Of a DNA stretch of 64,000 nt, positions 6,521 through 60,446 are shown one piece after another. Origin of the DNA: Zygnema circumcarinatum SAG 698-1b. Its lineage: Eukaryota; Plantae; Zygnematophyceae. Numbering within the stretch: the stretch's first letter is position 1; every line of letters begins with the position of its first letter. The stretch covers positions 3,236,829 to 3,300,828 of the forward strand of contig CM074807.1 of the NCBI GenBank assembly GCA_037447605.1, given 5' to 3'. The translations under genes and the position numbers were made by a program. Below the pieces are notes generated by a model. That model did not search any database and was not told the DNA's origin. It worked only from the letters and a program-made list of their open reading frames with translations.

Positions 6521-9500
6521 TCAGTGTTCTCCCATTCCTCCTGAATGCCAGAATTCAGGCCCTCCTGCATGTCCCTCACTCATAGGCAGCAGAGTTGGGC
6601 TTCCTTCCGACGCAAACTCCTCTGCGTCCGCATTTAAATCGAACCCTCCACGGAAATGTGCCGTCTCCCGCGCTCTCCCCATCCCTCCCAAAAGGCCATC
6701 CTCACTACCACTCTCCTCACGCTCTTCCTCTTCCGGGGCAGCATTCATATCAATCTCCATAGGGTGCCTCCCAGTCCCCCACTCCTGCCGCTTCTCTTCC
6801 TCTTCCACCTCACCCTCCCCTTCTCGCTCTCCCTCTCCCTCTCCTTCTCCCTCTCCCTCTCCCTCTCCCTCTCCCTCTCCATCTTCCACTTCCTCCTCTT
6901 CCTCGTCCTCTTCCTCTTCCTCTTCCTCTCCCTCGCCCTCTCCCTCTCCTTCTACCTCTCCCTCTCCCTCTCCCACCCCCTCTCCAACCCCCTCTCCTTC
7001 TCCGTCTCCTACTTCCGCATCCACTGCCTCCGCCTCCACCTCTCCCTCCTCCTCCTCCTCCTCTTCCTCCTCCTCCACCTCCTCCTCATCCTCTTCCTCC
7101 TGCTCCTCCTCCTCCTCCTCCTCTTCCTCTTCCTCTTCCTCCTCCTCTAACTCCTCCTCCCCATCTTCGCCGCCTTCTTCAACATTTGCTTCTGATGGAA
7201 CGGAACCTTCTTCGAAGCTTCTCTCAAATCCCTCCACCTCCCCTCTCTTCATGTTCTCTTCCTGCTCCCAAGCTGTGGGAGGAGTTGAAGTTCCCCCTTC
7301 CTCAGTAGACAAATTTCCATCCTCGGCCACAAGGCCAAGCGGAGAAGGAGAAGACTCTTGTGTAGCATCTGTTCCTTGGCTTGAAATCAAATTGCAACCA
7401 TTTTCTTTCTTTAGCCCGGAATCCCTCTCTTCGCCTCCTCCCTCAACAGCAGAAGGAACCCCAATCCCCCCACTCTCTGCTACCTCCATTTTTTTTTCAA
7501 ACCGCAAAAACGAAAGTTCCCTGCGAAAGTTGGTACAGCGGTCTGCATTTGGGAGCTCTTGAATGAGTCGGCAAATGACGGGGTGGGAGAGGCCGTACAT
7601 CTCCGTTCCATTGATGGCAACCTGCCGGCACGGCAGATGGTGGGAGGAGGGAAGGAGGGGGGGGGAAGAGAGAGTGAGAGTGAGAGGCAGAGAGAGGTGG
7701 AGAGCGAGTGGAGAAAGAAAAAAGGAGGGAGAACAGTTGAACACTCTTCCTGTAAACCCTCCCAAACTCTCACCTCATAGCAACAACCAAACGAGCAACA
7801 AACAAAAAATTTGAAGTAGGAAAGGACCCAAGAAAAAAAAAGCCCCCCNNNNNNNNNNCCCCCCCCCCCCCCCCCCCCCCCCCAAAAAAAAAGCCCTCCC
7901 CTGCCCACTCCTCCACTTCCCTCTCTCCCTCCCCATCCCTCTCCCCCACCTTCTCTCTCTCTATCCCCTGCAGTCGGTTCTGCAGCATGCAGACTGCTGC
8001 CCAAGCACCGGAAGCTGAGTCTTTCTCCACTGCAAGATGGGGGGGCTCGTTTTGGACTATGCGGAAGGAGGGCCCTCCTACTCCAGTGTCCACTATGGAG
8101 CAGGTGAAGGAGGAGCGGGAGAGGGAGGGAGAGAGAGAGAGAGCCCTGCGGGAGGCAGCGGGAGAGTGTTCGCGGATGATAGTGAAGCCGGCAGGGAAGA
8201 TGTGACGCTCGGTATGCCATCCAGCGCGGTCCGCGACAATGTGGCCCTGGGGAGGGAGAGTGGGAGAGGGAAAGGTGGGAGAGGGAAGTGGGAGGAGAGA
8301 GAGATGGGAGAGGAGGGAGGTGAGAAGGGGAAGAGTATGGAGAGGGGAGAGGGCGAGGGGAGAGGTGGGAGAGGGGAGAGATGAGAGACGAAGAGGTGGG
8401 AGTGGGGAGAGGTAGGGAGAGGAAGAAGGGAGAGGTGGATGTGCATAGAGAGAGAGTGGGGAGCTCATAAGCAGGTTTGACATTTCACATATAATTGAGT
8501 TTCAAGAACTTTTTCATGTACTTATTACTTCTTATTTCTCTCCTTCTCTCTCTCTCTCTCTCTTCCCTCTCTCTCTCTTTCTCCCTTTCTCACCAGGTCG
8601 ACCAATCGAAGGCGATCTGTGAGCACCAAAGGGAGCCGAGGCATCCCATTTTCATCGCGAGGAACTTCAATAATTTTTGTATATTTCGCCTTTTTTGGGA
8701 GTCTCTCCCTCTCCCTCTCCCTCTCCCTTTCCCCCTCGTCGTAGCCCCCCTCCTCTCCCTCCCTCTGCCACGTGGCAGCCTCCCGTTGGGCGGCGCTGCG
8801 CTTTCCTGGCAGTAAGCCGGACCCTCCTTCAGCTTTAGGGTTTGTATCGATTTTCTTTGCCTTCACGCTTCTCCTTGACTGCTGCGGCAAAACAATGCAG
8901 TTAGAAATCCCTCTCTCTCTCTCTCTCTCTCTCTCTCCCCCTCTCTTGCCCCCATATCCTCCAACTCTTTCTAACCTGCTCTCCCTTCCACTCCCTCTCA
9001 CCCTGATTCCCTTCCCGACAACCTCCTTCCCCTTCTTCCCTCTCTGCTCTGCTCTGCTCTCTCCGCTCTCTCCTCTCTCTCTTTGCTTTGCTCTCTGCTT
9101 CTGTACCCCCTCCAGCTCTCCCACCTCGCCCACCCTTGCCGTCTCACGCTCTCTCTCCTCCCTTCCCCCCTCCTCACTATTCGAATCCCTCTCTTCGAAC
9201 AATTCAAAACAAATTTAATCTCGTCCCACTACCCCAGATTACGGAATCTAATAAAAAATTGTTGCATTTGAACCCTTAATCTTCCAAGTAAAGCATTTAT
9301 TGACTGATTTTTCCTTGAGTGAAAAACTGCCCCTCCATACCTTTGCCATCTGCCTCTTCAGCAACTTCTCCACATACTTCAATCGCCGCACCAACACCTT
9401 CGTGTGTATTACCACTCCCCCGTCCACTCTCGCACCCTCTCTCACCTTCTCTCCCTCTCCCTCTCCCTCTCCCTTTCCCCCCCTCTCTCCCTCCTTCCTC

Positions 9501-12500
9501 TCTCCCTCCAGCTCCTCCTCCCAGTCGCTCGCCTTCGTTCCAAACCCCATAGGGTCTATGCCCGCCGAAACGTCCAACCCTTTCCCTCTCTGTTCATGGC
9601 TCTCTCCCTTCAGGGAGGGAGAGGCTGCGGGAGGAGCCGAGAGAGAGGGAGAGGGAAAGAGTCGGCAAAAAGGCAAACTCGGGTCCTTCAAAACCGCAAC
9701 CCAGTTGCCAAATCCGTGCTTCAAGACCCCCTGCAGGACACAGAAATTGAAAATAGAAAAGGGAGAGGGAGGGAGGAGGGAGAGGGAATGCTGATTCAGG
9801 TTCGTTCTCCACTAGAGAGTGTCCTAACCATCCTTAAACAATTTTCTGACTTATAAAATTATTTCGGTTTTTAAATGCTTTGATTAAGAGTTCCATCGTC
9901 TTTAGCTTGTAAAATATTCAATAATAATATGTAAGAAACAATCGGGATGAGAGAGAGTGAGGGATAGCGCGAGCGCGAGCGCGCGAGAGCGAGAGAGAGA
10001 GAGCCTAAAAACAACCCTAGTAAACCCTAACGACCATGAAACCCACCCGGAAAAAGGGCTTTTAGGGTCTTTTGGGTCTAGAGAGAGAGAGATGGAGAGC
10101 AAGAGCGAGAGGCAGAGAGAAAGAAAGGGAGAGAGAGCGACAGAAAGAATGAGAGAGAGCGAGAGCGAGAGCGAGAGCGAGAGGGAGAGGGGGAGAAAGA
10201 AAGAGAGAGAGAGAGCGAGAGAGCGAGAGAGAAAGAGAGAGAGAGACAGAGCGAGAGAGAGAGAAAGACAAAGAAAGAAAGAGCGAGAGAGAGAGAGAGT
10301 GAGAGAGAGAGAGAGAGGGAGAGAGAGAGGGGGAGGGAGAGAGAGCGAGATAGAGACCCGTGCGAGTGCCTTGTCGTGCAGCGGCGGGTCCCAATTGGGC
10401 GGCAGGCCGTGCGCCCGCACGTGCGGCAGGTTGGGGAGGGTCCCCCCGCGAATCCCGGCGAGCGCCCAGCGGAGGACGGAGGCCTGCTCGAGCCGCTCCT
10501 GGAGGCGGGCCCGGCATCATTGCACGCGGACACAGCGTCCGCTGGACAGCCGAAGGAAGGAAGGAAGGGAAGGGAAGGAAGGGAAGGGAAGGGCGAAAGG
10601 AAGGAAGGAAGGGAAGGAAGGAAGGGAAGGGAAGGATGGAAGGAGCGGAAGGAAGGAAGGGAAGGAAGGGAAGGGAAGGAAGGAAGGGAAGGGAAGGAAG
10701 GAAGGAAGGGAAGGAAGGAAGGAAGGAAGGGAAGGGAATGGGTTGAAGGGCGAAGGAAGGGAAGGAAGGGAAGGAAGGGAAGGAAGGAAGGGAAGGGAAG
10801 GGAAGGGAAGGAAGGGCGGAAGGAAGGGAAGGGAAGGGAAGGGAAGGAAGGGAAGGGAAGGGAAGGGAAGGGAAGGGAAGGAAGGAAGGGAAGGGAAGGG
10901 AAGGGAAGGAAGGAAGGGAAGGAAGGGAAGGGAAGGAAGGGAAGGAAGGAAGGGAAAGGAAGGGAAGGGAAGGGAAGGGAAGGAAGGGAAGGGAAGGGAA
11001 GGGAAGGAAGGGAAGGAAGGGAAGGAAGGAAGGGAAGGGAAGGAAGGGAAGGGAAGGAAGGGAAGGGAAGGGAAGGGAAGGAAGGAAGGGGAAGGAAGGA
11101 AGGGAAGGGAAGGGAAGGGAAGGGAAGGGAAGGAAGGGAAGGAAGGGAAGGAAGGGAAGGAAGGGAAGGAAGGAAGGGAAGGAAGGGAAGGGGAAGGGCG
11201 GGAAGGGAAGGAAGGGAAGGAAGGGAAGGGAAGGGAAGGAAGGGCTGGCTGAAGGAAGGAAGGAAGGAAGGGAAGGAAGGGAAGGGAAGGGGAAGGGAAG
11301 GGAAGGGAAGGGAAGGAAGGGAAGGGAAGGCTGAAGGGAAGGAAGGGAAGGGAAGGGAAGGAAGGGAAGGGAAGGAAGGGAAGGAAGGGAAGGGAAGGAA
11401 GGGAAGGGAAGGAAGGAAGGGAAGGGAAGGGAAGGAAGGGAAGGGAAGGAAGGAAGGAAGGGAAGGAAGGGAAGGGAAGGGAGGGAAGGAAGGAAGGAAG
11501 GGAAGGAAGGCTGAAGGGAAGGAAGGAAGGGAAGGGAAGGAAGGGAAGGAAGGAAGGAAGGGAAGGGAAGGAAGGAAGGAAGGGAAGGGATGGGGCTGGA
11601 AGGGAAGGAAGGGAAGGAAGCTGGAAGGGAAGGGAAGGAAGGAAGGAAGGAAGGAAGGGAAGGGAAGGAAGGAAGGAAGGAAGGAAGGAAGGGAAGGAAG
11701 GGAAGGAAGGGAAGCTGAAGGAAGGAATGGAAGGAAGGAAGGGAAGGAAGGGAAGGAAGGGAAGGAAGGAAGGAAGGAAGGAAGGAAGGGCGAAAGGGTA
11801 TGAAGGGGAAGGAAGGGAAGGGAAGGGAAGGAAGGGAAGGGAAGGGGCGCAAGGGAAGGGAAGGAAGGGAAGGGAAGGGAAGGGAAGGGAAGGAAGGAAG
11901 GGAAGGAAGGGAAGGGAAGGGAAGGAAGGAAGGAAGGAAGGGGCGGGAAGGAAGGGAAGGAAGGGAAGGGAAGGGAAGGGAAGGGAAGGGAAGGGAAGGG
12001 AAGGGAAGGAGGGAAGGAAGGAAGGGAAGCGGGAAGGAAGCCGGAAGGAAGGGAAGGGGCTGAAGGGAAGGGAAGGAAGGGAAGGGCTGAAGGAAGGGAA
12101 GGGATGGGCGAAGGAAGGGAAGGGAAGGAAGGAAGGAAGGAAGGAAGGGAAGGGAAGGGAAGGGAAGGAAGGAAGGGAAGGAAGGGAAGGGAAGGGAAGG
12201 GAAGGGAAGGGAAGGGAAGGGGGGCTGAAGCTGAAGGGAAGGGATGGGAAGGAAGGAAGGGAAGGGAAGGAAGGAAGGAAGGAAGGAAGGAAGGAAGGGA
12301 AGGGAAGGGAAGGAAGGGAAGGGAAGGAAGGAAGGAAGGAAGGAAGGGAAGGAAGGAAGGGAAGGGAAGGGAAGGGATGGAAGGAAGGAAGGGAAGGGAA
12401 GGGAAGGGCATGTGGAAGGAAGGAAGGGAAGGGAAGGGAAGGGAAGGGCAGCGGAAGGGAAGGAAGGGAAGGAAGGCGAAGGGAAGGGAAGGAAGGAAGG

Positions 12501-13535
12501 AAGGGAAGGAAGGGAAGGGAAGGAAGGGAAGGGAAGGGGAAGGGAAGGGTAAAGGGAAGGGAAGGGAAGGAAGGGAAGGGAAGGGAAGGGAAGGGCGAAG
12601 GGAAGGGGCATGGGAAGGAAGGGAAGGAAGGGAAGGGAAGGGAAGGGAAGGAAGGGAAGGGAAGGAAGGAAGGAAGGAAGGAAGGGGCTGGAAGGGAAGG
12701 AAGGGAAGGGAAGGGAAGGGAAGTGAAGTGGGAAGGGAAGGGAAGGGAAGGGCGGGGAAGGGAAGGAAGGGAAGGGGCAGGTAAGGCTTGAAGCATGGCG
12801 GTTCAGTTCAGTTCAGTTCAGTGGGGGCTGAGGTCTGGTGGGAGGGAGTCGGAGAGTTGATCCGGATTTGATTCCGAAGGAAGGGGGCGTTTGGATGTGC
12901 GAGGTTGGGGAGCTATGGGAGGGAGGGAGGGAGGGAGGGAGGGAGGGAGGGAGGGAGGAGAACATTGAGAAAGGGGGAGGAATGAGGGAGAGTGAGGTTC
13001 TCCTACCGCAGTGTTGAGAGTGAGGATGTTGGGCCCTGTCTGCTCCGTCCCGCCTTTTGCCCTCTCTCCCTCTCTCCCTTCCTCCGCCCCTCCCGCCTGC
13101 ACTTTTCTTCTCACTCTGCAGACCAGGCACTGCCACCCAACAGGCCCAAAGTCACCCCCTCCAAAAGACAAAGTTAAAACTCAAACGCACGCCGAATCCC
13201 AAACCCTAGACTGAGAGAGACCGAAAGAGACAGACAGAAAGAGAGAGGGAGAGAGAGAGAGAGAGAGAACGAGACGAGGGGGCGAAGAATACGCACTGGA
13301 CAGGTGGCAGGATGATTGAAGAGTTTGACTTTTCCCGCCTTCTCCCGCTGCGCTATGGAGACGCCCGCTGTCAGGTGGTGCAGCTCGCCAAGCAGCGCTC
13401 CCACTCCCGCCTCTATCGCTCCCACCGACTTCTCTCTCACACTCGGGAGGAGGCTCTTCTCCCGCAGGGTCTTCCACGAGGGCTCGCTACCTGGCCCCTG
13501 TGGGAGAGGAGGGGGGAGAGAGGGAGAGGGAGGGG

Positions 13536-13573
<38 letters not shown>

Positions 13574-13588
13574 AGAGANNNNNNNNNN

Positions 13589-13629
<41 letters not shown>

Positions 13630-16600
13630 CGAGAGAGAGGGAGAGAGAGAGAGAGGGAGAGCTTTCAGGAGATGGAACGCTGAGAGACCCCCCAAAAAAA
13701 ATGGAAAACAACAAAACATGGCCTAGAAGCACACCGTAAAGGAACAAACTTGTAAATTAATAGTGGTAAGGAAAGTGGTAGAAAGAGTGAGACTGGGAAA
13801 GTGTGGAAGAGCGGGAAGCTTCTAAAACCTTATTATGACTTTTTTTGAATTTCATGGAGAATGCCTTTGTAAGGAAAGGTAAGAAAAAGTCAGATTGCTT
13901 GGTTAGGAAAAACAGATTTTAGAATTTTTTAGGTTTTTTTCCTGCACCGTTGGGAGGCCCCACTGCATGAGAAGTCGCAGAAGTTCAATTTTTTCGCGTT
14001 TCAGCCAGAAATTCGCCCTCCTTGACCCAGTAGGATGCTGACACGTGTCATCCCCTGACTTGCCTGAGGGCTTCTCGGGTCCCTGCACAACAGAGCGAAA
14101 AAATCCGTAAGAAATAAAGAAATTGAAAAAGGGTCATGGAAATGGAAGACGTTCAGAGTCAGGAATAAGAAAAAATCCGAAAACAAAATTTTGACCTCAT
14201 AACTGATTCTTTTAGGGGCTATTACAACCCTGCATAGAGAGAAAATCCCGGAACTCTGAACCCTAATTTTTTCCGCACCTTTCGGCACAATTTATAGAGG
14301 TGGTCCAAGAGTCGCTTTAGTCTTCTCGTGAGAGTGTAAGCATCAGGCCACACTGCGCTCTCCCTCTGCTCTCCCTCCTCTCCCTCCACTCTCTCCTCTT
14401 TCTCCTCCACAACCCTACAGAATTAAAGGACAAATATTAGCAGAAACGAAAATACAACCGTTAAAACGTTCCCTTTGGGGTTTGTTTTTCAGTTGAACTT
14501 TTAAGCATCAAAGCTGGCATAGCACTTATAATAAAAAATACTTGAAATGATCCCAAAGCAGCCTCCCATGTTATTGACTGTAAGAAGCTCTCCCCCTCTC
14601 TCACTCTCCCTCTCTCTCTATCTCTCCCCTTCTCCCTCTCTCTCCCCCTCTCTCTCCCTCCCCTTGTCCCTCTCTCTCTCCCTCTCTCTCTCCCCTTCTC
14701 CCTCTCTCTCTCCCACTCTCTCTCTCCCCTTCTCCCTCTCTCTCTCCCTCTCTCTCTCTCTCCTTCTCCCTCTCTCTCTCCCTCTCTCTCTCTCCCCTTC
14801 TCCCTCTCTCTCTCCCTCTCTCTCTCCCCTTCNNNNNNNNNNGGGGTAAAGAAAGGGAGATGGGGGGTGGGGAGAGGAAGAGGGGGAGATGAAATAGCAG
14901 AGAGAAGCAGAAGGACACAAGGGGGAAGACAAGGGGGAAGGAGACAGGGGTAATGGGGGGGGGGAAGAGGATGGAGGACACAGGGCAAGGGGAGAGAAAA
15001 AGGGGGAAGAGAGCGGTAAGGGTCGGCGAGAGAGGCAAAAGTTAGGCAGAGAGGAAAACATATAAGGGAAGGGGACAGATGGAAAGATAAGGCAATAAAG
15101 CATTAAGAGCGAGTGCGAATAGAAAGCATGAAAGGAGAAACAGGAGTAAAAAAGAAGTGAAAAAGGAGCAAAGGAGAGGAAGAGAGAGACAAAGAGGCAG
15201 AGTGAGAGGGAAGCTACCAGACGGTCGAGAAGCTCCAGTCGGCGCGCCCATCCTCTTGCGCAGCTGGCCACTCTTGCCTTCTCCCACACTCCCACTCTCT
15301 CGTCCACCCCCTGGCTAAGGTCCGCATCTCCCTCTCTCTCCACCTCCCGCAGCTTCCTCTCCGCCCATTGGCGGGTCCTCGCTTCCGCGTGCGGGGCCAC
15401 CGCCCGCAGAAAGGCCCAACTGGCGTCTGCCACGTCACCCACTCCGTGGCGCATCTGCCTCAGTAGGCCGCGCATGCAGCTCTGAACCTGTTCGGAAATT
15501 GGTTCGGAAATTGGTTCGGAAATTGGTTCGGAAATTGGTTCGAAAATTGGTTCGGAAATTAGGGTTTCAGGCATTGGCAACCACTTATTTAAGGAGAGAA
15601 AGGAGGGAGTGGCAGGTGGGGAATGATGGGGGATGGAGTAGAGAGAGAAAGAAAGTGAGGAGAGAGAGAGAGAGAGAGAGGCTCCTGGGACATCTGACGG
15701 TGAAGGCTGAATGTTAGAAGCTGACAAGTACGCTTGAGAAAGGCTTGAGGTGGCACACTTGCTCGAGAGGTTATAGAGGTTATAGATAAATTAGGGTCTT
15801 CAGCATTGATGAGTTTTTTCTTTTGGTGAGATTAGTCGAAGCAGGAGGAGGGTGGAGAAGATGATTTACCTTTTCGGATCGGCCGAGTCCGAACATTAAA
15901 AGAGATTTTCTCAGAGCTTCGCGTTCGTTGCTTTGCCAGCGAAGTTTTCTTCTTAGAAGGGACCTTTTGGAACTTAGCGACGCTGCTAACAAAGAAAAAG
16001 GGAAAGAGGAGAGAGAGAAAGTTTGAGTTGGATCAGTAAGAGAGACAGACAGAGTGTGGGAGAGACAGAGAGTGAGAGAGTAAAGCATCACCTGCTGCTC
16101 CTCCTGCTTTTTTATTAACATTTGCAGCAATGGCTTTCGTTTGGTGTCCGTTTCCAGACCCTTCGGCGAGTTTCGGAGTTCCAAGATTGGGAGCTTTGAA
16201 GCCTCCGCCCTCTTGAGGGAGAGAGAGTGGGGAGAGAGGGGGCTTTGAGCGAGAGGGAGGGAGAGGGCTGAGAGCTGAAGCCATTGGTGGCTGGAGTCCT
16301 GGAATGGGATCATCAAGTTCCTGGAAAAGAAGAAATGAAAGGCCAACATAGGGTCAATTCTGGGCTCTTTATCACACACACTACTAAGGGTAGGAAATAG
16401 GGATAGCATATGTAACATAATTGTGAAATGGAATCATTGGAAAAAAGAATGGACAATTATAGAATTGAGTAATGGAAATATACAACGACAAAATAAGGTG
16501 ACGATAATGATAAGGATAATAATAGAGATGACAAAAGCAATAGTAATAGTAACATTATTACTATTGCAAAGTCGAATGATAGCCATAACATTGAAGGAGC

Positions 16601-17590
16601 AAATACGTCTTTACGGACCTTTCGCCAGACCCTCTGCGCAGCGAGAAGGTCCTGGCAGCATTGGAGGCACTGCGCGCGATACCACGCGGTGAGATGAGCG
16701 GCTCTCGCTGCTCTCGCATTCTGCATGGCCCCTGGAAACCCTAGAAACCGTTTGTACTGAACATTCCTCCACTCCTTCCGAAACCGAAATCTATGGCTTC
16801 AAATGAGGGTAATCAAATCACTCTGTTCTCTCTCAATCTCTCTGCCTCCCTCTCGCATTTTCTCTCTCTCTCTCTCTCTCTCTCTATACATATATCCACT
16901 GACTATACATTCCTTCCATTTAACGAAACATAAATTCCTTTTAAAGGAGAACACAGCCCACAACCTTGCAAACTTAATAAGGAAAAGGAGGAGAGGGTCC
17001 AAAAAGTACCCTGAATCCGGCCATCATGGTCGACCCCTACTCCTGATCCTCTCCTGCTCTCGCTCGCTCCTCGCCTTTCCCTCTCCCGTTCTCTTTCGTT
17101 CTCTCGCTCCCTCTCCTTCTCCCGCTCTCTCTCTCTCTCCCTTTCTATCTCCCTCTCCCTCTCGTTCTCTCTAACCCTCATCCTCTCCTTCTCCCGCTCT
17201 CTCTCCCTCTCCCTTTTTATCTCCATCTCCCTTTCCCTCTCTTTGTACCTAACCCTCATCCTCTCCTTCTCCCTCTCCCTCTCCCTCTCCAACTCTCTCT
17301 GCCACTCCTTCTCCCTTCCTCGCTCCCCCTCCTTCTCCCTCTCCCTCTCCCTCACCCTCATCCCCCCCCTCTCTCGCTTCCTCTCTCCTACAACCGACTC
17401 AACCTTTCGACCTCCGTGCATGACCCCTCCCTCCACCCCCTCTCCCTCCCACTCGTCTCCTTCATCACATTCCGCCCACGCCTCCTCTCTCAGCATACCC
17501 GCACCGCCTGCCACGTGTCTCTCTCTCCCTCTCTCCCACCCCCTCGTCCCTCTCTCCCTCCCCCCTCCCGCTTGCTGCCATCAAATCCAT
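6521..17590 (-). CDS. Multi-exon chromatin protein: two CHD6-9/Kismet-like SANT/SLIDE-type modules, FYRN + FYRC, and a long acidic Glu/Gly tail; no SNF2 ATPase or chromodomain exons seen
   Basis: Exon motifs in order: RWQSNEREALRKSLLMFGLGR (~15950-15870), WARRLELLDRL (~15250), WPDAYTLTRRLKRLL (~14350), FWLKREKIELLRLLMQWGLP (~14010), RLQERLEQASVLRWAL...LPPNWDPPLHDKALAR|GVLKHGFGNW (10498-10358, 9730), LVRRLKYVEK, EVPRDENGMPRLPLVL...DL|GHIVADRAGWHTERHIFPAGF (exon 8246-7950), VAINGTEMYGLSHPVICRLIQELPNADRC (exon 7621-6521). The start is uncertain: ATG 17590 needs an indel to join the 17514 frame. Confidence 0.72.
7849..7858. other. Assembly gap of 10 N; others at 13579-13588, 14833-14842, 21398-21407, 24008-24017, 33749-33758, 35011-35020
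   Basis: Uniform 10-N runs, almost all inside homopurine/homopyrimidine tracts. Confidence 0.98.
10552..12780. repeat. ~2.2-kb irregular GGAA/GGGAA purine satellite inside an intron (pyrimidine on the sense strand)
   Basis: Nearly pure mix of GGAA and GGGAA units with rare C/T interruptions. It accounts for the long spurious PFPS/GREG ORFs. Confidence 0.95.
15490..15561. repeat. 12-bp tandem repeat GTTCGGAAATTG, about 6 copies
   Basis: Directly visible. On the minus strand it lies between CCCTAAT and the likely acceptor ...GAACAG|GTTCAG. Confidence 0.85.
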
Positions 17591-17924: not shown

Positions 17925-19485
17925 ATGCCTCCTATCACACCCCGTCCCAGCGTTGCAAAAAACGGCCGACAGTGTCCATGGAAACACCACACCAGAGACC
18001 TGCACTACGCATTCAGCAGCGCTTCTCCTGCTGCCACATGGCACTTCTGCTGGCCTTCTTGCCCAGACCCTGTTCTCAATAATGGGGTTCCATATTTAAA
18101 AGGAGAGTCTATATGGAGGCGATTTGCAGTTCCAGTGCTGGTGGTAGCCATGGCTGTCGTCTCCTTCACAATGCAGGTAGCCCTTGTATTGTTATTTCTA
18201 AAGAATCCCAAAAGCTTAAAAAAATTCAATACAGTGCCCATTGTGTTGGAACTTAATCAAATCCCTTCACTCCCTTTCCGACCATGCAGTTAACGGCTGG
18301 TCAATCATTGCCCGTTCATCGTTGGTTTTATGATTTTTGGAGAGATTCCTAAGATATTGAGATGCGGAGATGTAGGAATGACGGAGTTATCCAGAAACTA
18401 AGTCTGAAACTTATTCTCGTTATTGTGTGTACGGAAAGTAAGGAGAGAAATTGGTTTGCATGGGAGCAGGTGTGGGAGCTCTCATCTCTGCAGTTAGGAA
18501 ACCTTCTAGGGTTTGCAGCAGCCTTGGGAAGCTTGCTCGTATTTAAGGCTCTATTTTCTGGAGCTGTTGTAAGAGGTGACTTCACAATTCTAAGCACATC
18601 AAAACTATTGCGTTGCAATAAGCAAGATTTCTATTTCAAAGAGGTTTGGTCATATAACTTTGTGATGTTTTCTTTTTCCTTTTTCTATCTACATATTCAA
18701 TCAATGATGGCTTATTTTTTACCTTTCCTTCCCTAATTTGTTGCGCAGAATCTATCATTGTATGGCCTGGTTTGGGAATTCAGCTGGAAGCCACTACTCG
18801 CGGGTAGGTCAAAAGCTTCTTTATTAGCACATTACGCCAATATGTAAAAATTTAAGCCACTTTATAGTCCTTTTCTAACTTCAATTTTCTGGGATTTTTT
18901 TTCTTTTCGATTTTTTCCAATTTCCAGGGGGTACGTGACGAGGAGGTTTGTTCCCTTCCCCCTTTTGGGAGCTGTAGTTATCAACGAGGCTGTGACTCCC
19001 ACCGGCTGCTTTTTTTACTTAGCCCTAATTCTGCAGGGGAGGGACCACCTCCATCTGCCCTTCGAGGTGAACCCTAATTTCTCTTTTCTCTTCCCTTCAA
19101 ATTTAAATCGAATTGAATTTTTTGTTTCTCATTGTTTGTTGTCAAATTTTTTTTTTTTAACCCCTTTGTTAGAAGGGAGGGAGGGCCCTTGTTGGATATG
19201 TCGAGGTTTATATTAAAAAATTAACTTGTACTGAGAAAGGGGGGAAGGGGGGAGGGGGGGTCTGATCAGAGTTTGAGACCGCCCTTGGCTGTTCTCGTGC
19301 CTCTGCGGAGTTCCCTGGCAGCAACTCTCGCGTTGCAGGGAGGGGGGGGAGAGGGAGAGAGTGGGGGTGAGGAAGAGAGAGAGAGAGGGGGGGAGGTGAG
19401 GGGAGAGAGAGAGGACGGAGGGAGAGAGAGTGGAGGGGAGGGACGAGGGGAGGGAGAGAGGCAGACCAAGGGAGGGGGAAGGTGA
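17925..19485 (+). CDS. PIGH: GPI-GlcNAc transferase subunit PIG-H (5 exons)
   Basis: Exons 17925-18176, 18470-18575, 18749-18803, 18928-19066, 19270-19485 with consistent phases. Product contains ESIIVWPGLGIQLEATTRGGYVTRRFVP...VVINEAVTPTGCFFYLALILQG...FESLRPPLAVLVP, matching the PIG-H domain. Confidence 0.85.
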
Positions 19486-19905: not shown

Positions 19906-22900
19906 TCAACAGGTCAACGGCTTACATGTGACATGTAAACGCTCAGCCGTTCCCTTGTCATCTACGGCTTCCGTAATCTCCTCTTGGCGCACATTTTCAT
20001 GGTTGTGAAGTATCTGCTCAATCGAAAGTGGTAGGGAGGGAGGGAGGGAGGGGGGAAGGGAGGGAGGGACGACGAGAGGGAGTGAGGGAGAGGGAGCGAC
20101 CAATGTAGAAAAAGGAGGGAGAGGGAGGGGGGGAAGGGAGGGAAGGGAGGGAGAGAGAGAGAGAGTGGGGCGACGAGAGGGAGAGGGGGAGAGGGAGAGA
20201 GGGGAAGGCGGAAAGGGATGGAGGGAGGGAGAGGGACGACGAGAAGGAGAGAGTCAGAGTGGGAGGGATGAGACGAAGTAGGGAAGGGAGGAGGGACGGA
20301 GGAGGAAAATGGAGGAAAGGAGACGATAGGTGTGAGAAAGGAAGGGAGTGAGGAGAAGGCAGGGAGTTAGGGGCGAACGGAATCGACGGGTGAATGGAGG
20401 TAGAGAGAGGGAGGGAAGGAGGGAGAGAGAGACGTCCAGTTGGATCTCAACATACTACTTCCTTTCCTCTTTCCTCTCCTTCCCAATTTCTTTCCATTTT
20501 CTTTCCCCTTTCTTTCCCGTTTCTTTCCATTTCCCCTCCCTTCTCTTCTCTCCCCGGGGCTCACCTCGCGCATGGAGGCGGCGTTGTCACTTTCCATCCG
20601 CCGCACATCGCCCATCGTCACGTCACACCACTCGTCCATCCATCCAAATATCTTCTTGTGGCTCTCCAAAAATAGGGCTCGCTCGCCCTGCCCCAGTTCG
20701 CACTCACAAGCAAATGTCAAGCCAAAACCAAGCTAACTCGAGTAAAGTGAAGGCAATTCAAATGAAGGCAAAAGGAAACGTAAGTCAAATCAAGTCAAGC
20801 CAAGTCAGGCGAATTCGAGCGAAGTCAATTTTCATCAAGCAGAACGAGTTTGCCATTCACCGAAAGGATAGTTTTCTCGGCCCGCGTGCCCCATCCCCAA
20901 TATGGGACATTCACTGTCACTAATTTGTACGCCGTCATAATCGGAGATGTGCGGGTCTGCATCATCACGCATCGACGACATCACTCAGACACGTGTCAGT
21001 GCATACGCTCCCAACATCACGCAAACTATCCCTTCCCTCACTCTGTCCCCGTCCTTTGAGGAATGGGAATCGAACACAGAATTGAAGAACGAGTGCGAGA
21101 GAGAAAGTGAGAGAGAGAGGGAGGGGAAGGGGGAAGGGGGAAGGGTGAGGAGCGGGGAGGGAGAGGGGGGAAGGGGGGAGGGGAGATGGGGAGAGGGGGA
21201 CAGAGAGAGAGAGAAGAGGGACAAAGAGGGGGAGAGGGTGAGAGAAGAGAGAGATGGAGGAAGGGGGGAAGGGAGGGGAGCGGGGAAGGGGGAGGGGGGA
21301 GGGGAGAGAGGGAGGGGAGGGAGAATGGGAGAGAGAGAGAGAAGAGGGACAAAGAGGGGGAGAGAGTGAGAGAAGAGAGAGAGGGGGGGAGGGGGGANNN
21401 NNNNNNNAGAGGAGAGAGAGAGGGGGGAAAGGGGGGAAGGGGGGGGAGTGGGGAAGGGGGAGGGGGGACGGGAGAGGGGAGAGGGGTAGGGAGGGGAGAG
21501 AGGGAGAGAGGGGGAAAGAAGGGGAGCGAGGAGCGGGGAGCGGGGAGGGGGGAGGGGAGAGGGGAGAGGGGGAGAGAGGGATAGGAAAGGGAGAAAAAGG
21601 GGGAGAGAGTGAGAGAAGAGAGAGAGGACCTGCCAGCCTGGCAGCAGCGGGCCTCTCCCTGTCTTTTGCGACCTCGTGGCGGCGAGGTCAAGGCCCGCTC
21701 CGGGGATGACGTAGCTCCACCAATCGAGGGCGGTCTCTGCCACGTCGACAAAGTCCACGTGTCTCATCTCCAGCGCCTCCTGAGAGAGCTGGAGAGCCTG
21801 CCACGTGGCCACCCGGGTTTCATGTCTCAGTCAAACCAAAAAAAAACATTAGTCTAATAAATAAGGGGTTGCGTGAGTAATTCCATTAAGAACTCCTCTC
21901 CCTCTCTCTCGTTCACTCTCTCTATCTCTCTCTCTCCCCCTCTCTCTTTCTCTACCTTTCTCTCACATCGTTCTTTTAAGTTTTTTCAGAAACTTCGCTT
22001 CTCTATATTTTTCTGATTTCGAGATGCAGGCCAGAGAGGACAAAGGACAACAGAAGGAACCAGTTTCCATGTGGAAAATTTCGCACATTTTCTGTTGAAC
22101 CTGTGTCGGGAAGATGTATGGACTCCACTGTCAGCTTGAGACTGCTAAAATACGGACACTGCAAAATAAAAATAAAAATAAAAAATATGTATACATGAGA
22201 TGCGAGGAAGAAACAGTAGGTAAAACTTTTATTCACTCCATTTCAAGAGAGATCTTTGCCAGGCTTTGGCCTTTGTACTCACAGTTAGTTCTGACGGAAT
22301 GTAACGGAACCACCGTAGCAGGGAACAAGTTCCATGTGTGAACACCCCAACCAAAGTTCAAAAAGTTAAGCCCACAAAGACCGTAAGGACCTACTCTAAT
22401 GTTGTTTTTCATTAATACTATTTAAAAAAATGAATTAAAAAGCTAAAAAACAAAGAATTAAAAACTGGGGAAGATGATCTGCACCTGTCTTTATATGAGG
22501 AAATGCGTTCCATGACTTCTCCTCCAACTGGAGAGCGCTCGAAGGGGCAATAGCGCTCACCCACGAAGGGACTTTACTGTTATATATATACCCCATTTAG
22601 CCCTTTCCGAGAAAAGTAAAAATTTGGGCTAGCTAGCAACTAAACGACGAACAAATTACGAAAAGATTAAGAACGAATTAAAGAGGGTAAATTGGTGTTT
22701 TAGTGAGAAAAAAAAAATTACAAGTAGGAACTATCTACGGAGATAAGGCAGACCTGGCCAGCCGATATATCTTATGGGTGTATCGGCCCTTTCCCATTTT
22801 TTCATCGCTGAAATTTTCATTCACTAAAACTTCCACTCCTTCCGAGCCGTTCGTATTTTCCATTTCCATTTTCGTAACCGAATAGAGATGCCCCAATTCG

Positions 22901-25900
22901 TACTGCGCAAAAAAGTTACAATTTTTTCTGGTTGGGAGGATATTTGGGTGGAATAATATGAGAGGGAGAGAGTGAGAGAAAGGGAGGGAGAGAGGGAGGG
23001 AGGAAGGGGAGGGAGAGAGAGCAGGAGGAAAGGGAGAGAGAGGGCGCAGCGGAAGGAGAGAGAGCGGAGAGAGAGAGGGAGGGAGCGGGAGGAGGGAAGA
23101 GAGGAGGGGGAGCAGAGAGTGCGGGGGATAGGGCGAGAGGGAGAGGAGCAGGAAGGGGAATGAGAGGATGGAATAGCGAGAGTGGGGGTGAGGGAGGGAG
23201 AGAGGGAGCAGGAGGGGAGGGAAAGAGAGGGCGCAGCGGAAGCAAGGGAGAGGGAGCGGGAGAATGGGAAGAGCGGAGGGGGAACAGAGAGTGCGGGGGA
23301 TAGGGCGAGAGGGAGAGGATCAGGAATGGGAATGAGAGGATAGAATAGAGTGAGGGGGGGTGAGGGAGAGAGGGAGAAGTCCGCTGAAGAGAGTACTGAA
23401 GATAGTAGAGAGAGAGTGTGTTGATAGAGAGAACGAGGGAGGCCTTCAAGTGAGGCCTTAAAAATGGTCCCAAATTCCTTACTTAGATTATACAAATTCA
23501 AAGTTTAAAAGAAATAAACGTGTAGCTTTCTTACCTCCTCCAAAGAGAGAGGCATCACCACTCGACTGCTCGAACGTTCTCAAACAAAATTTGAGACTCG
23601 CGTTAAGGAATGAAACGATTAAAGATTACAGATGGACCAAACCTCATGAACACAATATAAGGAAAGGAAAGGGAGGAAAGATTGGCCTTGTTGATTGCAG
23701 GCCAGAGCGATGCTCTTGCATTTACACGCAGCCATCTATTAGGAGAGAGGGGAGGGGGGGAAGGGGGGAAGAGGCAGAGAGCGAGAGAGACAGGGGGTGG
23801 GGAGAGAGAGAGAGAGAGGAAGCGAGAGAGAGGGGAGTTGGAGAGAGAAGAAAGGTGAGAAAGAAGGGGGAAGAGAGAGAGGGAGATGGCACGGAGAGTG
23901 GGGGGGGGGGGAACAAGGGAAGAACGAGAGAGTTTTTTTCATTTTCTTTTCCTTTAACTTTCTTAAGTTAAAACCCAATAACGAGCCCATAAAGAAGACA
24001 CGGAAAANNNNNNNNNNCGCTTCTCTATATTTTTCTGATTTCGAGATGCAGGCCAGAGAGGACAAAGGACAACAGAAGGAACCAGTTTCCATGTGGAAAA
24101 TTTCGCACATTTTCTGTTGAACCTGTGTCGGGAAGATGTATGGACTCCACTGTCAGCTTGAGACTGCTAAAATACGGACACTGCAAAATAAAAATAAAAA
24201 TAAAAAATATGTATACATGAGATGCGAGGAAGAAACAGTAGGTAAAACTTTTATTCACTCCATTTCAAGAGAGATCTTTGCCAGGCTTTGGCCTTTGTAC
24301 TCACAGTTAGTTCTGACGGAATGTAACGGAACCACCGTAGCAGGGAACAAGTTCCATGTGTGAACACCCCAACCAAAGTTCAAAAAGTTAAGCCCACAAA
24401 GACCGTAAGGACCTACTCTAATGTTGTTTTTCATTAATACTATTTAAAAAAATGAATTAAAAAGCTAAAAAACAAAGAATTAAAAACTGGGGAAGATGAT
24501 CTGCACCTGTCTTTATATGAGGAAATGCGTTCCATGACTTCTCCTCCAACTGGAGAGCGCTCGAAGGGGCAATAGCGCTCACCCACGAAGGGACTTTACT
24601 GTTATATATATACCCCATTTAGCCCTTTCCGAGAAAAGTAAAAATTTGGGCTAGCTAGCAACTAAACGACGAACAAATTACGAAAAGATTAAGAACGAAT
24701 TAAAGAGGGTAAATTGGTGTTTTAGTGAGAAAAAAAAAATTACAAGTAGGAACTATCTACGGAGATAAGGCAGACCTGGCCAGCCGATATATCTTATGGG
24801 TGTATCGGCCCTTTCCCATTTTTTCATCGCTGAAATTTTCATTCACTAAAACTTCCACTCCTTCCGAGCCGTTCGTATTTTCCATTTCCATTTTCGTAAC
24901 CGAATAGAGATGCCCCAATTCGTACTGCGCAAAAAAGTTACAATTTTTTCTGGTTGGGAGGATATTTGGGTGGAATAATATGAGAGGGAGAGAGTGAGAG
25001 AAAGGGAGGGAGAGAGGGAGGGAGGAAGGGGAGGGAGAGAGAGCAGGAGGAAAGGGAGAGAGAGGGCGCAGCGGAAGGAGAGAGAGCGGAGAGAGAGAGG
25101 GAGGGAGCGGGAGGAGGGAAGAGAGGAGGGGGAGCAGAGAGTGCGGGGGATAGGGCGAGAGGGAGAGGAGCAGGAAGGGGAATGAGAGGATGGAATAGCG
25201 AGAGTGGGGGTGAGGGAGGGAGAGAGGGAGCAGGAGGGGAGGGAAAGAGAGGGCGCAGCGGAAGCAAGGGAGAGGGAGCGGGAGAATGGGAAGAGCGGAG
25301 GGGGAACAGAGAGTGCGGGGGATAGGGCGAGAGGGAGAGGATCAGGAATGGGAATGAGAGGATAGAATAGAGTGAGGGGGGGTGAGGGAGAGAGGGAGAA
25401 GTCCGCTGAAGAGAGTACTGAAGATAGTAGAGAGAGAGTGTGTTGATAGAGAGAACGAGGGAGGCCTTCAAGTGAGGCCTTAAAAATGGTCCCAAATTCC
25501 TTACTTAGATTATACAAATTCAAAGTTTAAAAGAAATAAACGTGTAGCTTTCTTACCTCCTCCAAAGAGAGAGGCATCACCACTCGACTGCTCGAACGTT
25601 CTCAAACAAAATTTGAGACTCGCGTTAAGGAATGAAACGATTAAAGATTACAGATGGACCAAACCTCATGAACACAATATAAGGAAAGGAAAGGGAGGAA
25701 AGATTGGCCTTGTTGATTGCAGGCCAGAGCGATGCTCTTGCATTTACACGCAGCCATCTATTAGGAGAGAGGGGAGGGGGGGAAGGGGGGAAGAGGCAGA
25801 GAGCGAGAGAGACAGGGGGTGGGGAGAGAGAGAGAGAGAGGAAGCGAGAGAGAGGGGAGTTGGAGAGAGAAGAAAGGTGAGAAAGAAGGGGGAAGAGAGA

Positions 25901-59811: not shown

Positions 59812-60446
59812 TCTCTTTCTCACTTTCCCTCTCCGCCTCCTCCCTACCTCTTCTCTCGCTGTTCAGAAAGCAACTCTTCCCACAAGGTTGTGGATAGAAA
59901 TTCTGGCTCAAACGAAGATGTTGTTTCTCCACCAGTGGTTTCGTTGCTGTTTTCTTATCCACTTATAGGTCTGTTTGTTATGATTTTGGCTCGAGTATTC
60001 ATGGGAGTTCCTCACCTTCAACTGCATCATAACAACTCCCTCACCTGTGCTCCAGAGGGGAAGGACTCTCTCATAGCTCTCAAACGGGTAAGTAAACGCA
60101 AATTATTGAATCTCTAGCACTAAGCTTCGACTGACTGCAACACCCTGCAATGCTTTTGAATGTGAATTTTTATATTTCCTGAGACTGAAGTAGCATTTGC
60201 AAAGCATTGAATTATAATCGTCTCCGGGTATGGGTATATTAGAGCACAATATCTGTTCATTTTTCTTATTATTTATTTTGGCTTTCTAGCGTTATTTTTT
60301 TTTTTTTGCTTGTATTTTTTACATTTTGACTGTTTTTTGTGCAGGATGACAATCCAAGTGCGGAGCTTGTTCTGTATAGAGAGTTTGTGCAATACGATTC
60401 GGAAAAGTGTGTTCCTCTGTACATCGTGTACTACAGCCGGGAATAA
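58608..60446 (+). CDS. Stand-alone PARP catalytic-domain protein (tankyrase-like ADP-ribosyltransferase, H-Y-E triad), ~225 aa, 5 exons
   Basis: Exons 58608-58632, 58843-58945, 59248-59576, 59969-60087, 60345-60446 join in phase (678 nt). Motifs EVLLFHGT, IIESGFD, MFGRGIYFAE, MILARVFMG, PEGKDS, LYREFVQY...PLYIVYY. Exons 1-2 are less certain than exons 3-5. Confidence 0.82.

What the first reader, a model, noticed from the sequence alone, without database searches (positions are those of the whole stretch)
6521..17590. CHD6-9/Kismet-like C-terminal half as a stand-alone, ATPase-less gene fused to FYRN/FYRC
Seen: exon motifs occur in the same order as the conserved regions I recall from the CHD7 C-terminus (LLxFGxGR; RxxLL; WPxxxTLTxRLxRL; WxxRExxxxxRxxxxxG; RLE; WxxxxHDxxLxxGxxKHG; RRL), followed by FYRN, FYRC and an acidic tail. 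The gene is bounded 5' by divergent PIG-H (ATG 17925), about 330 bp away, leaving no room for chromodomains or a SNF2 ATPase. Known: Arabidopsis has CHD1 (CHR5) and CHD3/Mi-2 types (PKL, CHR4, CHR7) but no CHD6-9. Inference: this is a split or motor-less CHD7-type DNA/nucleosome-binding subunit, possibly working in trans with a separately encoded ATPase or as a decoy.
Basis: partly seen in the sequence, partly recalled or inferred. Interest (0 to 1): 0.72.

Follow-up and report, generated by a model that had tools for sequence, protein, structure and literature searches.

The report
Motor-less CHD remodeler relative in alga
This alga carries a gene for the DNA-binding tail and FYR domain of a CHD-type chromatin remodeler with no ATPase motor. 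The same motor-less protein is conserved from green algae to a conifer, and red algae and trichomonads keep the full motor-bearing version.

Summary

All exons align colinearly to unnamed orthologues of 930-1440 aa in Mesotaenium, Diphasiastrum, Taxus, Ostreobium, Bryopsis and the haptophyte Diacronema. None has chromodomains or an SNF2 motor.

The N-terminal half is two tandem SANT-SLIDE modules of CHD type (profile vs yeast Chd1 DNA-binding domain, E 1e-13 and 3e-9; modelled orthologue module, Z 13.9). The FYR module is TBRG1-type (E 5e-43).

New here: full chromo-SNF2 remodelers with the same tail plus FYRN/FYRC exist in Cyanidiophyceae and Parabasalia. The FYR "fusion" is therefore ancestral, and the green lineage kept a motor-less copy (one clade, support 100/98).

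The CHD6-9 assignment is likely but indirect: Pfam HTH_CHD6-9 is above cut-off only in the red-algal relatives, CHD7 has two SLIDE domains, and IMG labels family members CHD7.

Gaps 7849-7858 and 13579-13588 lie in introns and are harmless. Gap 14833-14842 probably hides the exon for the first SLIDE: the block is absent and the splice phases do not match.

No ATPase coding exists anywhere in the 64-kb window. The scan has not noted this on other DNA.

The parts
16619..16726 (-). Exon A: probable start codon (ATG 16726) and a 36-aa N-terminal motif specific to the motor-less clade
   Evidence: tblastn to Diphasiastrum P0006 residues 93-128, E 0.009. Aligned with five orthologues in A4. The junction ...RVWRK|ELDD... 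matches P0006 ...QWRQELED....
16092..16320 (-). Exon A2: variable linker. It ends in phase 1, which fits exon B.
   Evidence: Acceptor TTTTCCAG and donor GTGATG read. One carried base plus the two leading bases of exon B restore a codon.
15870..15985 (-). Exon B: SANT/Myb-like helix of module 1 (W..NEREALRKSLLMFGLGRSEK)
   Evidence: tblastn to P0004 94-128 (E 9e-8) and P0006 189-227 (E 6e-10). Orthologues hit Pfam Myb_DNA-binding at this position.
15218..15487 (-). Exon C: helical linker of module 1, ending ...RRLELLDRL in phase 0
   Evidence: tblastn to P0004 123-221 (E 5e-16) and P0006 220-309 (E 1e-16). Codons read.
14415..15217 (-). The exon or exons for SLIDE 1 (about 65-130 aa in orthologues) are missing here.
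   Evidence: P0004 residues 222-348 and P0006 residues 310-449 have no counterpart. A SLIDE-1 profile finds only exon H anywhere in the window. Exon C ends in phase 0, but exon D needs two bases from the previous exon.
14279..14414 (-). Exon D: WPDAYTLTRRLKRLLDHLYKLCRK block between the two modules
   Evidence: tblastn to P0002 81-116, 72% identity, E 3e-10, and to P0006 450-474.
13948..14082 (-). Exon E: first helices of module 2 (W.KREK.E..R.L..WG). This position matches Pfam HTH_CHD6-9 in relatives.
   Evidence: tblastn to P0004 423-441 and P0006 495-518. The homologous segment of P0199 (1273-1359) hits PF23078 at 38.7 bits against a cut-off of 27.
13297..13497 (-). Exon F: rest of the tri-helical/SANT-like part of module 2
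   Evidence: tblastn to P0002 171-242, 44% identity, E 2e-12. Gap 13579-13588 lies in the E-F intron; orthologue residues are contiguous across it.
10358..10498 (-). Exon G: helical linker and start of SLIDE 2 (LPPNWDPPLHDKALAR). The 5' boundary is uncertain, because an in-frame TGA lies at 10517-10519.
   Evidence: tblastn to P0002 291-341, E 8e-5. Codons read.
9341..9730 (-). Exon H: SLIDE 2 helix-turn-helix (GVLKHGFGNWVAVLKDPSLPF), an acidic linker, and the RRLKYVEKLL helix
   Evidence: Pfam HTH_CHD1_Hrp3, E 1.5e-4. tblastn to P0004 614-743, E 2e-10.
8594..8881 (-). Exon I: basic linker and the pre-FYRN strand (IEVPRDENGMPRLPLVLTDRLRLVDL)
   Evidence: tblastn to P0006 747-797, 54% identity, E 9e-9. 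This segment falls inside the TBRG1 2WZO match.
7950..8246 (-). Exon J: FYRN plus the first half of FYRC
   Evidence: Pfam FYRN E 7.8e-8; FYRC profile positions 1-39. Used as the query that found the family.
6521..7621 (-). Exon K: second half of FYRC, a long acidic E/G-rich tail, and the stop codon at 6521-6523
   Evidence: Pfam FYRC E 1.2e-10, profile positions 41-81. tblastn to P0006 871-913, 70% identity, E 6e-14. Gap 7849-7858 lies in the J-K intron.

Best explanation
The gene encodes a non-catalytic chromatin protein of about 1,150-1,250 aa. It belongs to a conserved but undescribed family that is the motor-less counterpart of an old CHD-FYR type of nucleosome remodeler.

Shown:
- The protein has a short clade-specific N-terminal motif.
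- It has two tandem SANT-helical linker-SLIDE modules, each homologous to the DNA-binding domain of Chd1.
- It has a TBRG1-type FYRN/FYRC domain and an acidic tail.
- It has no chromodomains and no SNF2 ATPase.
- Motor-bearing proteins with the same C-terminal half exist in Cyanidiophyceae and Parabasalia.
- The motor-less proteins of green plants and a haptophyte form one clade.

Inferred:
- An ancestor, most likely a subfamily III (CHD6-9-like) remodeler, lost its chromodomain-ATPase half in this lineage.
- The remaining protein binds extranucleosomal or linker DNA through its two SLIDE-type modules.
- Its FYR domain docks a partner such as a remodeler, a histone-modifying complex or a transcription factor. 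It would then act as a targeting or spacing subunit rather than as an enzyme.
For: Domains in the window:
- FYRN and FYRC in exons J and K, and HTH_CHD1_Hrp3 in exon H.
- Exons colinear with P0004, P0006 and P0002.

The family:
- The 99-aa exon J retrieved proteins of 930-1440 aa with FYR at about residue 770-900.
- Sources are Mesotaenium, Diphasiastrum (11 isoforms), Taxus, Ostreobium, Bryopsis and Diacronema.
- Pfam on these gives Myb/SANT, two HTH_CHD1_Hrp3 hits above cut-off (40-53 bits), FYRN and FYRC, and no SNF2 or chromo domain.

No motor nearby:
- Motor profiles find nothing in the 64-kb window.
- PIG-H diverges upstream.
- Upstream neighbours are a raffinose synthase in Ostreobium and an RWP-RK gene in Bryopsis.

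CHD homology:
- Family profiles against solved structures: module 2 vs yeast Chd1 DNA-binding domain, E 1.3e-13; module 1, E 3e-9; CHD4 SANT-SLIDE, E 1e-4 to 8e-4.
- AlphaFold model of P0004 411-681: pLDDT 80. Best matches are Chd1 DNA-binding domains at Z 13.9 (rmsd 3.0 A over 183 residues) and CHD4 at Z 11.0; the next unrelated match is at Z 6.
- FYR vs TBRG1 2WZO, E 4.6e-43.

Motor-bearing relatives:
- P0199-P0202 (Cyanidiophyceae) and P0030, P0185-P0190 and P0192-P0197 (Parabasalia-type; named ones are Trichomonas vaginalis P0196 and Histomonas P0187) carry Chromo + SNF2 + Helicase_C + the same tail + FYRN/FYRC.
- P0004 aligns to P0199 colinearly: 100-652 to 968-1528 (E 2e-15) and the FYR region (E 4e-23).
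- In the tree, the motor-less clade has support 100/98.

Subfamily III pointers:
- PF23078 HTH_CHD6-9 scores 38.7 bits in P0199 and hits 7 of 16 family members at E up to 1, all sub-threshold (best E 6e-4); no CHD1/2-specific SANT_HL1 or CHD1-like_C hit appears.
- CHD7 has two SLIDE domains, and all 13 metamonad CHDs were placed in subfamily III (PMC9113485).
- IMG labels eight family members 'chromodomain-helicase-DNA-binding protein 7'.

Precedent for an FYR protein as a remodeler subunit: T. brucei FYRP in the ISWI complex (PMC4646403).
Against: - No transcript evidence was obtained. Expression rests only on one run of the same organism that holds 0.24 of the sampled words, against an exon fraction of 0.23.
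- The window copy lacks SLIDE 1 as assembled, so a truncated or decaying copy is not excluded.
- DNA binding and partner docking are inferred from homology alone.
- The subfamily III call is indirect. Every solved-structure and Atlas neighbour is CHD1, CHD4 or ISWI type. The red-algal motor scores best against human CHD1, with no CHD6-9 chain among the matches to compare.
- The tree is unrooted, so 'one loss' is the simplest reading and is not proven.
Confidence: 0.72

Rival explanations
1. Split gene. The protein is the detached C-terminal half of a subfamily III CHD and works as an obligate partner, in trans, of a separately encoded chromo-ATPase half in the same genome.
For: [quoted passage not shown]
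- No green-lineage protein with both a motor and FYR was among the 150 listed of the 152 FYR hits.
- An FYR protein is a subunit of the T. brucei ISWI complex.
Against: - Taxus keeps the motor-less protein although gymnosperms have no subfamily III motor.
- Haptophytes have many subfamily III motors as well as the motor-less form.
- The motor-less N-terminus shows no vestige of the post-motor segment (hhalign probability 0.2%).
- No ATPase gene lies next to it in three genomes.
- The C-termini of green subfamily III motors could not be inspected.
Confidence: 0.15
2. The tail derives from a CHD1-type (subfamily I) remodeler rather than from CHD6-9, and the CHD7-like motif order is shared CHD heritage.
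For: - The best solved-structure matches are Chd1 DNA-binding domains.
- The nearest Atlas cluster is a CHD1 DNA-binding domain, score 0.90.
- HTH_CHD1_Hrp3 is the strongest Pfam hit.
- The red-algal motor scores highest against human CHD1, 592 bits.
Against: - No CHD6-9 chain matched in the solved-structure searches, so those rankings are one-sided.
- CHD1 has a single SANT-SLIDE unit, whereas this family and CHD7 have two SLIDE domains.
- PF23078 HTH_CHD6-9 is above its cut-off in P0199, while the CHD1/2-specific families (SANT_HL1, CHD1-like_C) never hit.
- Metamonad CHDs are all placed in subfamily III.
Confidence: 0.15
3. Assembly or annotation artefact. The ATPase exons exist but lie outside the window or in a gap, for example with PIG-H nested in a very long intron.
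For: - The assembly has gaps, and one gap probably hides an exon of this very gene.
- The Diphasiastrum orthologue spans 107 kb, so long introns do occur in this family.
Against: - No motor-like coding occurs in the 46 kb upstream.
- Independent gene models and transcripts from at least six species start with the same short N-terminal motif and no motor.
- Exon A has an ATG, and its stop-free frame extends only 24 codons upstream of that ATG.
Confidence: 0.03
4. Chance resemblance. The gene is simply a TBRG1 orthologue whose helical N-terminus mimics CHD motifs.
For: The FYR module is TBRG1-type, and single exons give no significant Pfam or PDB hit for most N-terminal pieces.
Against: - Profiles of both modules hit the Chd1 DNA-binding domain at E 1e-13 and 3e-9.
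- The fold match reaches Z 13.9.
- The tail is colinear with motor-bearing CHDs.
- TBRG1-like proteins in the hit list carry an INO80E/F-like N-terminus instead.
Confidence: 0.01

Closest known systems
CHD subfamily III remodelers (CHD6-9, Kismet)
   Same: - Post-motor order: SANT-like LL.FG.GRW, a helical RxxLL segment, SLIDE 1, WP...LT.RL.RL, a tri-helical domain (Pfam HTH_CHD6-9 in relatives) and SLIDE 2.
- Two SLIDE domains, as reported for CHD7 (PMC9113485).
   Different: - No chromodomains, no SNF2 ATPase and no BRK domains.
- A TBRG1-type FYRN/FYRC domain and an acidic tail are present instead.
- No direct sequence comparison with metazoan CHD6-9 could be run.
Motor-bearing CHD-FYR proteins of Cyanidiophyceae (P0199, Cyanidiococcus CCYA03G0976; P0202, Cyanidium) and Parabasalia (P0196, Trichomonas vaginalis 'F/Y-rich N-terminus family protein')
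   Same: The whole C-terminal half is colinear: two SANT-SLIDE modules plus FYRN/FYRC.
   Different: They keep tandem chromodomains and an intact SNF2 motor. The window's family starts with its own 35-aa motif instead.
Chd1 DNA-binding domain (SANT-SLIDE; PDB 3TED, 2XB0, 5J70)
   Same: Each module has the same fold and is detectably homologous in sequence (E 1e-13; Z 13.9 over 183 residues).
   Different: Chd1 has one such unit attached to a motor. Here two units stand in tandem, with no motor and no CHD1 C-terminal helical domain.
TBRG1/NIAM (FYR domain, PDB 2WZO)
   Same: Contiguous FYRN-FYRC with the preceding strand; profile E 4.6e-43.
   Different: TBRG1-like proteins are about 400 aa and have an INO80E/F-like coiled coil at the N-terminus, not SANT-SLIDE modules.
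Trypanosoma brucei FYRP, an FYR-domain subunit of the ISWI complex (PMC4646403)
   Same: A non-catalytic FYR protein that works with an SNF2-type remodeler.
   Different: FYRP is 54 kDa with an N-terminal FYR domain, and no SANT-SLIDE is described for it. Homology beyond FYR was not tested.

Membership tests
CHD subfamily III (CHD6-9/Kismet) | Tandem chromodomains N-terminal to the motor | tested here: not met
   No Chromo hit in the window's exons or in the nine orthologues scanned. A chromo+motor query finds nothing in the 64-kb window.
CHD subfamily III (CHD6-9/Kismet) | SNF2-family ATPase (SNF2-related domain plus Helicase_C) | tested here: not met
   Absent from the window and from the motor-less orthologues that were scanned. 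Among the session's proteins, motors occur only in the cyanidiophyte and parabasalid groups.
CHD subfamily III (CHD6-9/Kismet) | Post-motor tail with a SANT-like domain and two SLIDE domains | tested here: met
   Orthologues have Myb/SANT and two HTH_CHD1_Hrp3 hits. The window has SANT 1 (exon B) and SLIDE 2 (exons G/H). SLIDE 1 is missing at the assembly gap. Two SLIDE domains in CHD7 are reported in PMC9113485.
CHD subfamily III (CHD6-9/Kismet) | Tri-helical domain, Pfam PF23078 HTH_CHD6-9 | tested here: inconclusive
   No hit for exons E or F taken separately. Sub-threshold in 7 of 16 family members, best E 6e-4. Above cut-off (38.7 bits against 27) only in the motor-bearing red-algal relative, at the homologous position.
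CHD subfamily III (CHD6-9/Kismet) | BRK domains near the C-terminus | tested here: not met
   No BRK hit in any Pfam scan. FYRN/FYRC occupies the C-terminus.
Chd1-type SANT-SLIDE DNA-binding domain | SANT-helical linker-SLIDE fold and sequence homology | tested here: met
   Profiles A2 and A3 against Chd1 DNA-binding domain give E 1.3e-13 and 3e-9. The model of orthologue P0004 411-681 reaches Z 13.9, rmsd 3.0 A, 183 residues. This was tested on orthologues, not on a joined model of the window's protein.
FYR-domain proteins, TBRG1 type | Adjacent FYRN and FYRC forming one domain | tested here: met
   Pfam FYRN E 7.8e-8. FYRC profile positions 1-39 (exon J) and 41-81 (exon K). Family profile against TBRG1 2WZO gives E 4.6e-43, against 6e-13 for KMT2D.
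FYR-domain proteins, TBRG1 type | INO80E/F-like N-terminal coiled coil, as seen in the TBRG1-like hits | tested here: not met
   Present in P0018 and P0023. Absent from the window's exons and the orthologues.
Motor-less CHD-FYR clade (Mesotaenium ME000052S08124, Diphasiastrum O6H91_07G007200 and others) | Colinear orthology over the whole length, including the clade-specific N-terminal motif | tested here: met
   tblastn hits for exons A-K in order, with the single exception of SLIDE 1. N-terminal motif aligned in A4. The clade has support 100/98.

The most novel reading that the evidence does not exclude
An ancestral subfamily III CHD remodeler carried a TBRG1-type FYR domain. In the green lineage its DNA-binding/FYR half became an independent gene. 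That gene outlived the motor, persisting in a seed plant that lacks subfamily III motors, and now serves as a detachable linker-DNA 'ruler' or targeting subunit for other remodelers or histone-modifying complexes. By the same logic, animal CHD6-9 and TBRG1 could be separated descendants of one ancestral protein.
Probability: 0.25. Interest if true: 0.8.

Novelty: new variant of a known kind. Interest (0 to 1): 0.6.

Why it matters
CHD remodelers are defined by their motor. A tail-only version conserved from chlorophytes to a gymnosperm suggests that the SANT-SLIDE/FYR half has a function of its own.

The finding adds FYRN/FYRC to the accessory domains of CHD-type remodelers. A survey of 8,042 CHD homologues (PMC9113485) does not mention this domain, and its chromo-ATPase criterion could not have detected motor-less relatives.

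It gives plant chromatin biology an unstudied candidate regulator that seems absent from Arabidopsis-centred lists.

It also offers natural contrasts for asking what the tail does without the engine: motor kept in red algae and trichomonads, decayed in parabasalid paralogues, and lost in the green lineage.

Tried and rejected
1. Word-index search with the FYRC part of exon K found nothing. The orthologues are probably longer than the length window allows.
2. phmmer of exon G against solved structures found nothing. Single exons are too short.
4. Word-index searches with the tails of P0030 and P0199 returned only close kin, parabasalid-type and cyanidiophyte, plus P0199 itself as a weak hit (E 1.9e-4) to the P0030 tail. 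No metazoan CHD6-9 was retrieved, so no direct comparison was possible.
5. The Atlas feature search gave generic CHD1, ISWI and CHDCT2 neighbours only.
6. I tested whether the motor-less N-terminal motif is a vestige of the post-motor segment. hhalign probability was 0.2%, so the idea was rejected.
7. The low-complexity ORF at 16903-17514 as a 5' coding exon: no homologue supports it.
8. Paper searches for FYRN with Trichomonas and for TBRG1, FYRN and CHD7 together found no description of this architecture.
9. Supplements of PMC9113485 are not held.
All searches were exon by exon or used orthologues.

Full report
**What is in the sequence.**
Between 6521 and 16726 the minus strand carries a multi-exon gene in a genome rich in GA/CT microsatellites. 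Reading the codons around each conserved block gives twelve exons with canonical AG/GT borders:

| Exon | Coordinates |
|---|---|
| A | 16726-16619 |
| A2 | 16320-16092 |
| B | 15985-15870 |
| C | 15487-15218 |
| D | 14414-14279 |
| E | 14082-13948 |
| F | 13497-13297 |
| G | 10498-10358 |
| H | 9730-9341 |
| I | 8881-8594 |
| J | 8246-7950 |
| K | 7621-6524 (stop codon at 6521-6523) |

Pfam confirms FYRN (E 7.8e-8) and both halves of FYRC (E 0.006 and 1.2e-10), plus a weak CHD-type helix-turn-helix in exon H (HTH_CHD1_Hrp3, E 1.5e-4). The coding sum is 3,409 nt, about 1,136 codons, without the missing piece described below.

**The assembly gaps.**
- Gap 7849-7858 lies in the J-K intron. The FYRC profile runs 1-39 in exon J and 41-81 in exon K, and orthologue residues are contiguous across it.
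- Gap 13579-13588 lies in the E-F intron. Both borders are phase 0, and P0002 and P0004 align without a break.
- Gap 14833-14842 is different. Exon C ends in phase 0, but exon D needs two bases from its predecessor.
- About 125-140 orthologue residues, including the conserved first SLIDE block, have no counterpart in the assembly.
- A profile of that block finds only exon H, the second SLIDE, in the whole window.
- This gap, flanked by low-complexity repeats, therefore most likely hides one or two exons. True loss in this species is not excluded.

**Reads.**
One run of the same organism holds 0.24 of the sampled words of 7600-17590. That is close to the 0.23 exon fraction of my model.

**Relatives.**
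- The 99-aa exon J, searched against 1.84 billion representative proteins, gave 152 hits.
- The best long hits are proteins of 930-1440 aa with FYR near residue 770-900.
- Their sources are Mesotaenium endlicherianum (P0004), Diphasiastrum complanatum (P0006, eleven isoforms), Taxus chinensis (P0009, partial), Ostreobium (P0033), Bryopsis (P0048) and Diacronema lutheri (the P0010 cluster). All are unnamed or labelled 'hypothetical'.
- Pfam on them shows Myb/SANT, two HTH_CHD1_Hrp3 hits above cut-off, weak CHDCT2 and HTH_CHD6-9, then FYRN and FYRC. There is no chromodomain and no SNF2 domain.
- tblastn of P0004, P0006 and P0002 against the window hits every exon in order. This includes exon A, where the junction ...RVWRK|ELDD... 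mirrors ...QWRQELED... of Diphasiastrum.
- The window's gene is thus an orthologue of this family, closest to P0002 and Mesotaenium.

**Is a motor hidden?**
- Chromo+motor queries from P0199 and P0196 find nothing in any frame of the 64-kb window.
- PIG-H is confirmed on the opposite strand at 18848-19213.
- In Ostreobium the upstream neighbour is a divergent raffinose synthase. In Bryopsis it is an RWP-RK gene.
- The stand-alone, ATPase-less reading is therefore well supported.

**What the N-terminal half is.**
- Profiles of the two halves of the tail each match the yeast Chd1 DNA-binding domain over its helical linker and SLIDE: module 2 at E 1.3e-13, module 1 at E 3e-9. Human CHD1 and CHD4 SANT-SLIDE follow.
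- An AlphaFold model of Mesotaenium module 2 (pLDDT 80) finds Chd1 DNA-binding domains as its top twelve Foldseek matches.
- In the second-look alignment the Chd1 match reaches Z 13.9 (rmsd 3.0 A, 183 residues) and CHD4 reaches Z 11.0, with a drop to Z 6 below them.
- The protein is therefore two tandem SANT-SLIDE units followed by a TBRG1-type FYR domain (2WZO, E 4.6e-43).

**Motor-bearing kin.**
- A local profile of the tail also picked up FYR hits that carry motors.
- Pfam shows Chromo + SNF2 + Helicase_C + the tail + FYRN/FYRC in P0030.
- Follow-up found the same architecture in Histomonas and Trichomonas vaginalis ('F/Y-rich N-terminus family protein') and in the red algae Cyanidiococcus and Cyanidium.
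- Mesotaenium P0004 aligns colinearly to Cyanidiococcus P0199: 100-652 to 968-1528 (E 2e-15), plus the FYR region (E 4e-23).
- A group of parabasalid-type paralogues has decayed motors.
- In a maximum-likelihood tree of the shared region (24 rows, 666 columns), ten of the eleven motor-less proteins (green plants, Diacronema and unnamed environmental ones) form one clade (100/98). The eleventh, the long-branch P0076, sits unresolved beside it, and all eleven as one group get only weak support (62/31). The cyanidiophyte and parabasalid groups are separate, and the decayed paralogues form their own clade (99/96).
- The tree is unrooted. One loss of the motor is the simplest reading.
- The FYR domain is thus not a new fusion. 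It belongs to an old CHD-FYR architecture.

**Which CHD subfamily.** Direct comparison with metazoan CHD6-9 was not possible. The word-index searches did not reach them, and no CHD6-9 chain matched in the solved-structure searches.

Indirect evidence favours subfamily III:
- Pfam HTH_CHD6-9 is above cut-off in P0199, at the position homologous to exons E-F, and sub-threshold in 7 of 16 family members.
- CHD1/2-specific families never hit.
- CHD7 is reported to have two SLIDE domains, and the 13 CHDs of the one metamonad species sampled all fall in subfamily III (PMC9113485).
- IMG's automatic naming calls eight family members CHD7.

Evidence against: the nearest structural and Atlas neighbours are CHD1-type, and the red-algal motor scores best against human CHD1. 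I put about 0.75 on subfamily III.

**Literature.**
- Neither paper mentions FYR domains, as far as the passages I read show. The first never uses the term, and its chromo-ATPase criterion could not have found motor-less relatives.
- Searches for FYRN with Trichomonas, and for TBRG1 with CHD7, found no description of this architecture.
- T. brucei FYRP, an FYR protein in the ISWI complex, is a precedent for an FYR subunit of a remodeler.

**How it most likely works.**
- Shown: the domain content and the lack of a motor.
- Inferred: the two SANT-SLIDE units bind linker DNA as in Chd1, and the FYR domain binds a partner. The protein would then target or space nucleosome-directed activities without hydrolysing ATP itself.
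- An obligate in-trans pairing with a separately encoded subfamily III motor is possible. It is weakened by Taxus keeping the protein although gymnosperms have no such motor, and by the N-terminus showing no vestige of the post-motor segment.

**Verdict.** This is a real, conserved and apparently undescribed motor-less variant of a CHD-type remodeler family.

Noticed in passing
window 10520-12810: The F-G intron holds about 2.3 kb of purine-rich GGAAGG-type repeat on the + strand. GC and AT skews are near +0.9. It is open in all three minus-strand frames, giving 760-916-aa 'PFPSLPS' pseudo-ORFs.
   Followed up: partly
window 18848-19213 (+): The divergent neighbour is a PIG-H gene (Pfam PF10181, E 2.4e-8). 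Its first exons lie about 1.2 kb from exon A, across a GA/CT low-complexity stretch that is a likely bidirectional promoter region.
   Followed up: partly
P0107, P0135, P0060, P0143 (parabasalid-type proteins): These paralogues of the motor-bearing CHD-FYR proteins keep chromo remnants and the tail, but their SNF2 region is eroded to fragments. This is a second, independent route to motor loss.
   Followed up: partly
P0018, P0023 (TBRG1-like, about 410-440 aa): They combine an INO80E/INO80F-like N-terminal coiled coil with FYRN/FYRC. This is another link between FYR domains and SNF2-remodeler complexes.
   Followed up: no
P0092 (Tritrichomonas musculus KAK8837464, 1831 aa): It is labelled 'choline dehydrogenase 6', but Pfam shows a protein kinase, Sel1 and TPR repeats, a weak HTH_CHD6-9 hit and two FYR units. 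The name is probably wrong or the gene model is chimeric.
   Followed up: no
window 59911-60102 / 61319-61510 and 22820-22915 / 24842-24937 (-): Pairs of stop-free segments gave identical scores in a local profile search. This suggests near-identical duplicated stretches about 1.4 kb and 2.0 kb apart.
   Followed up: no
window 10517-10519: An in-frame TGA sits directly upstream of the conserved ...ARLQERLEQ... of exon G. The only canonical acceptor would cut off residues that are conserved in orthologues. Possible causes are a sequence error at the edge of the long repeat or an unusual acceptor.
   Followed up: no
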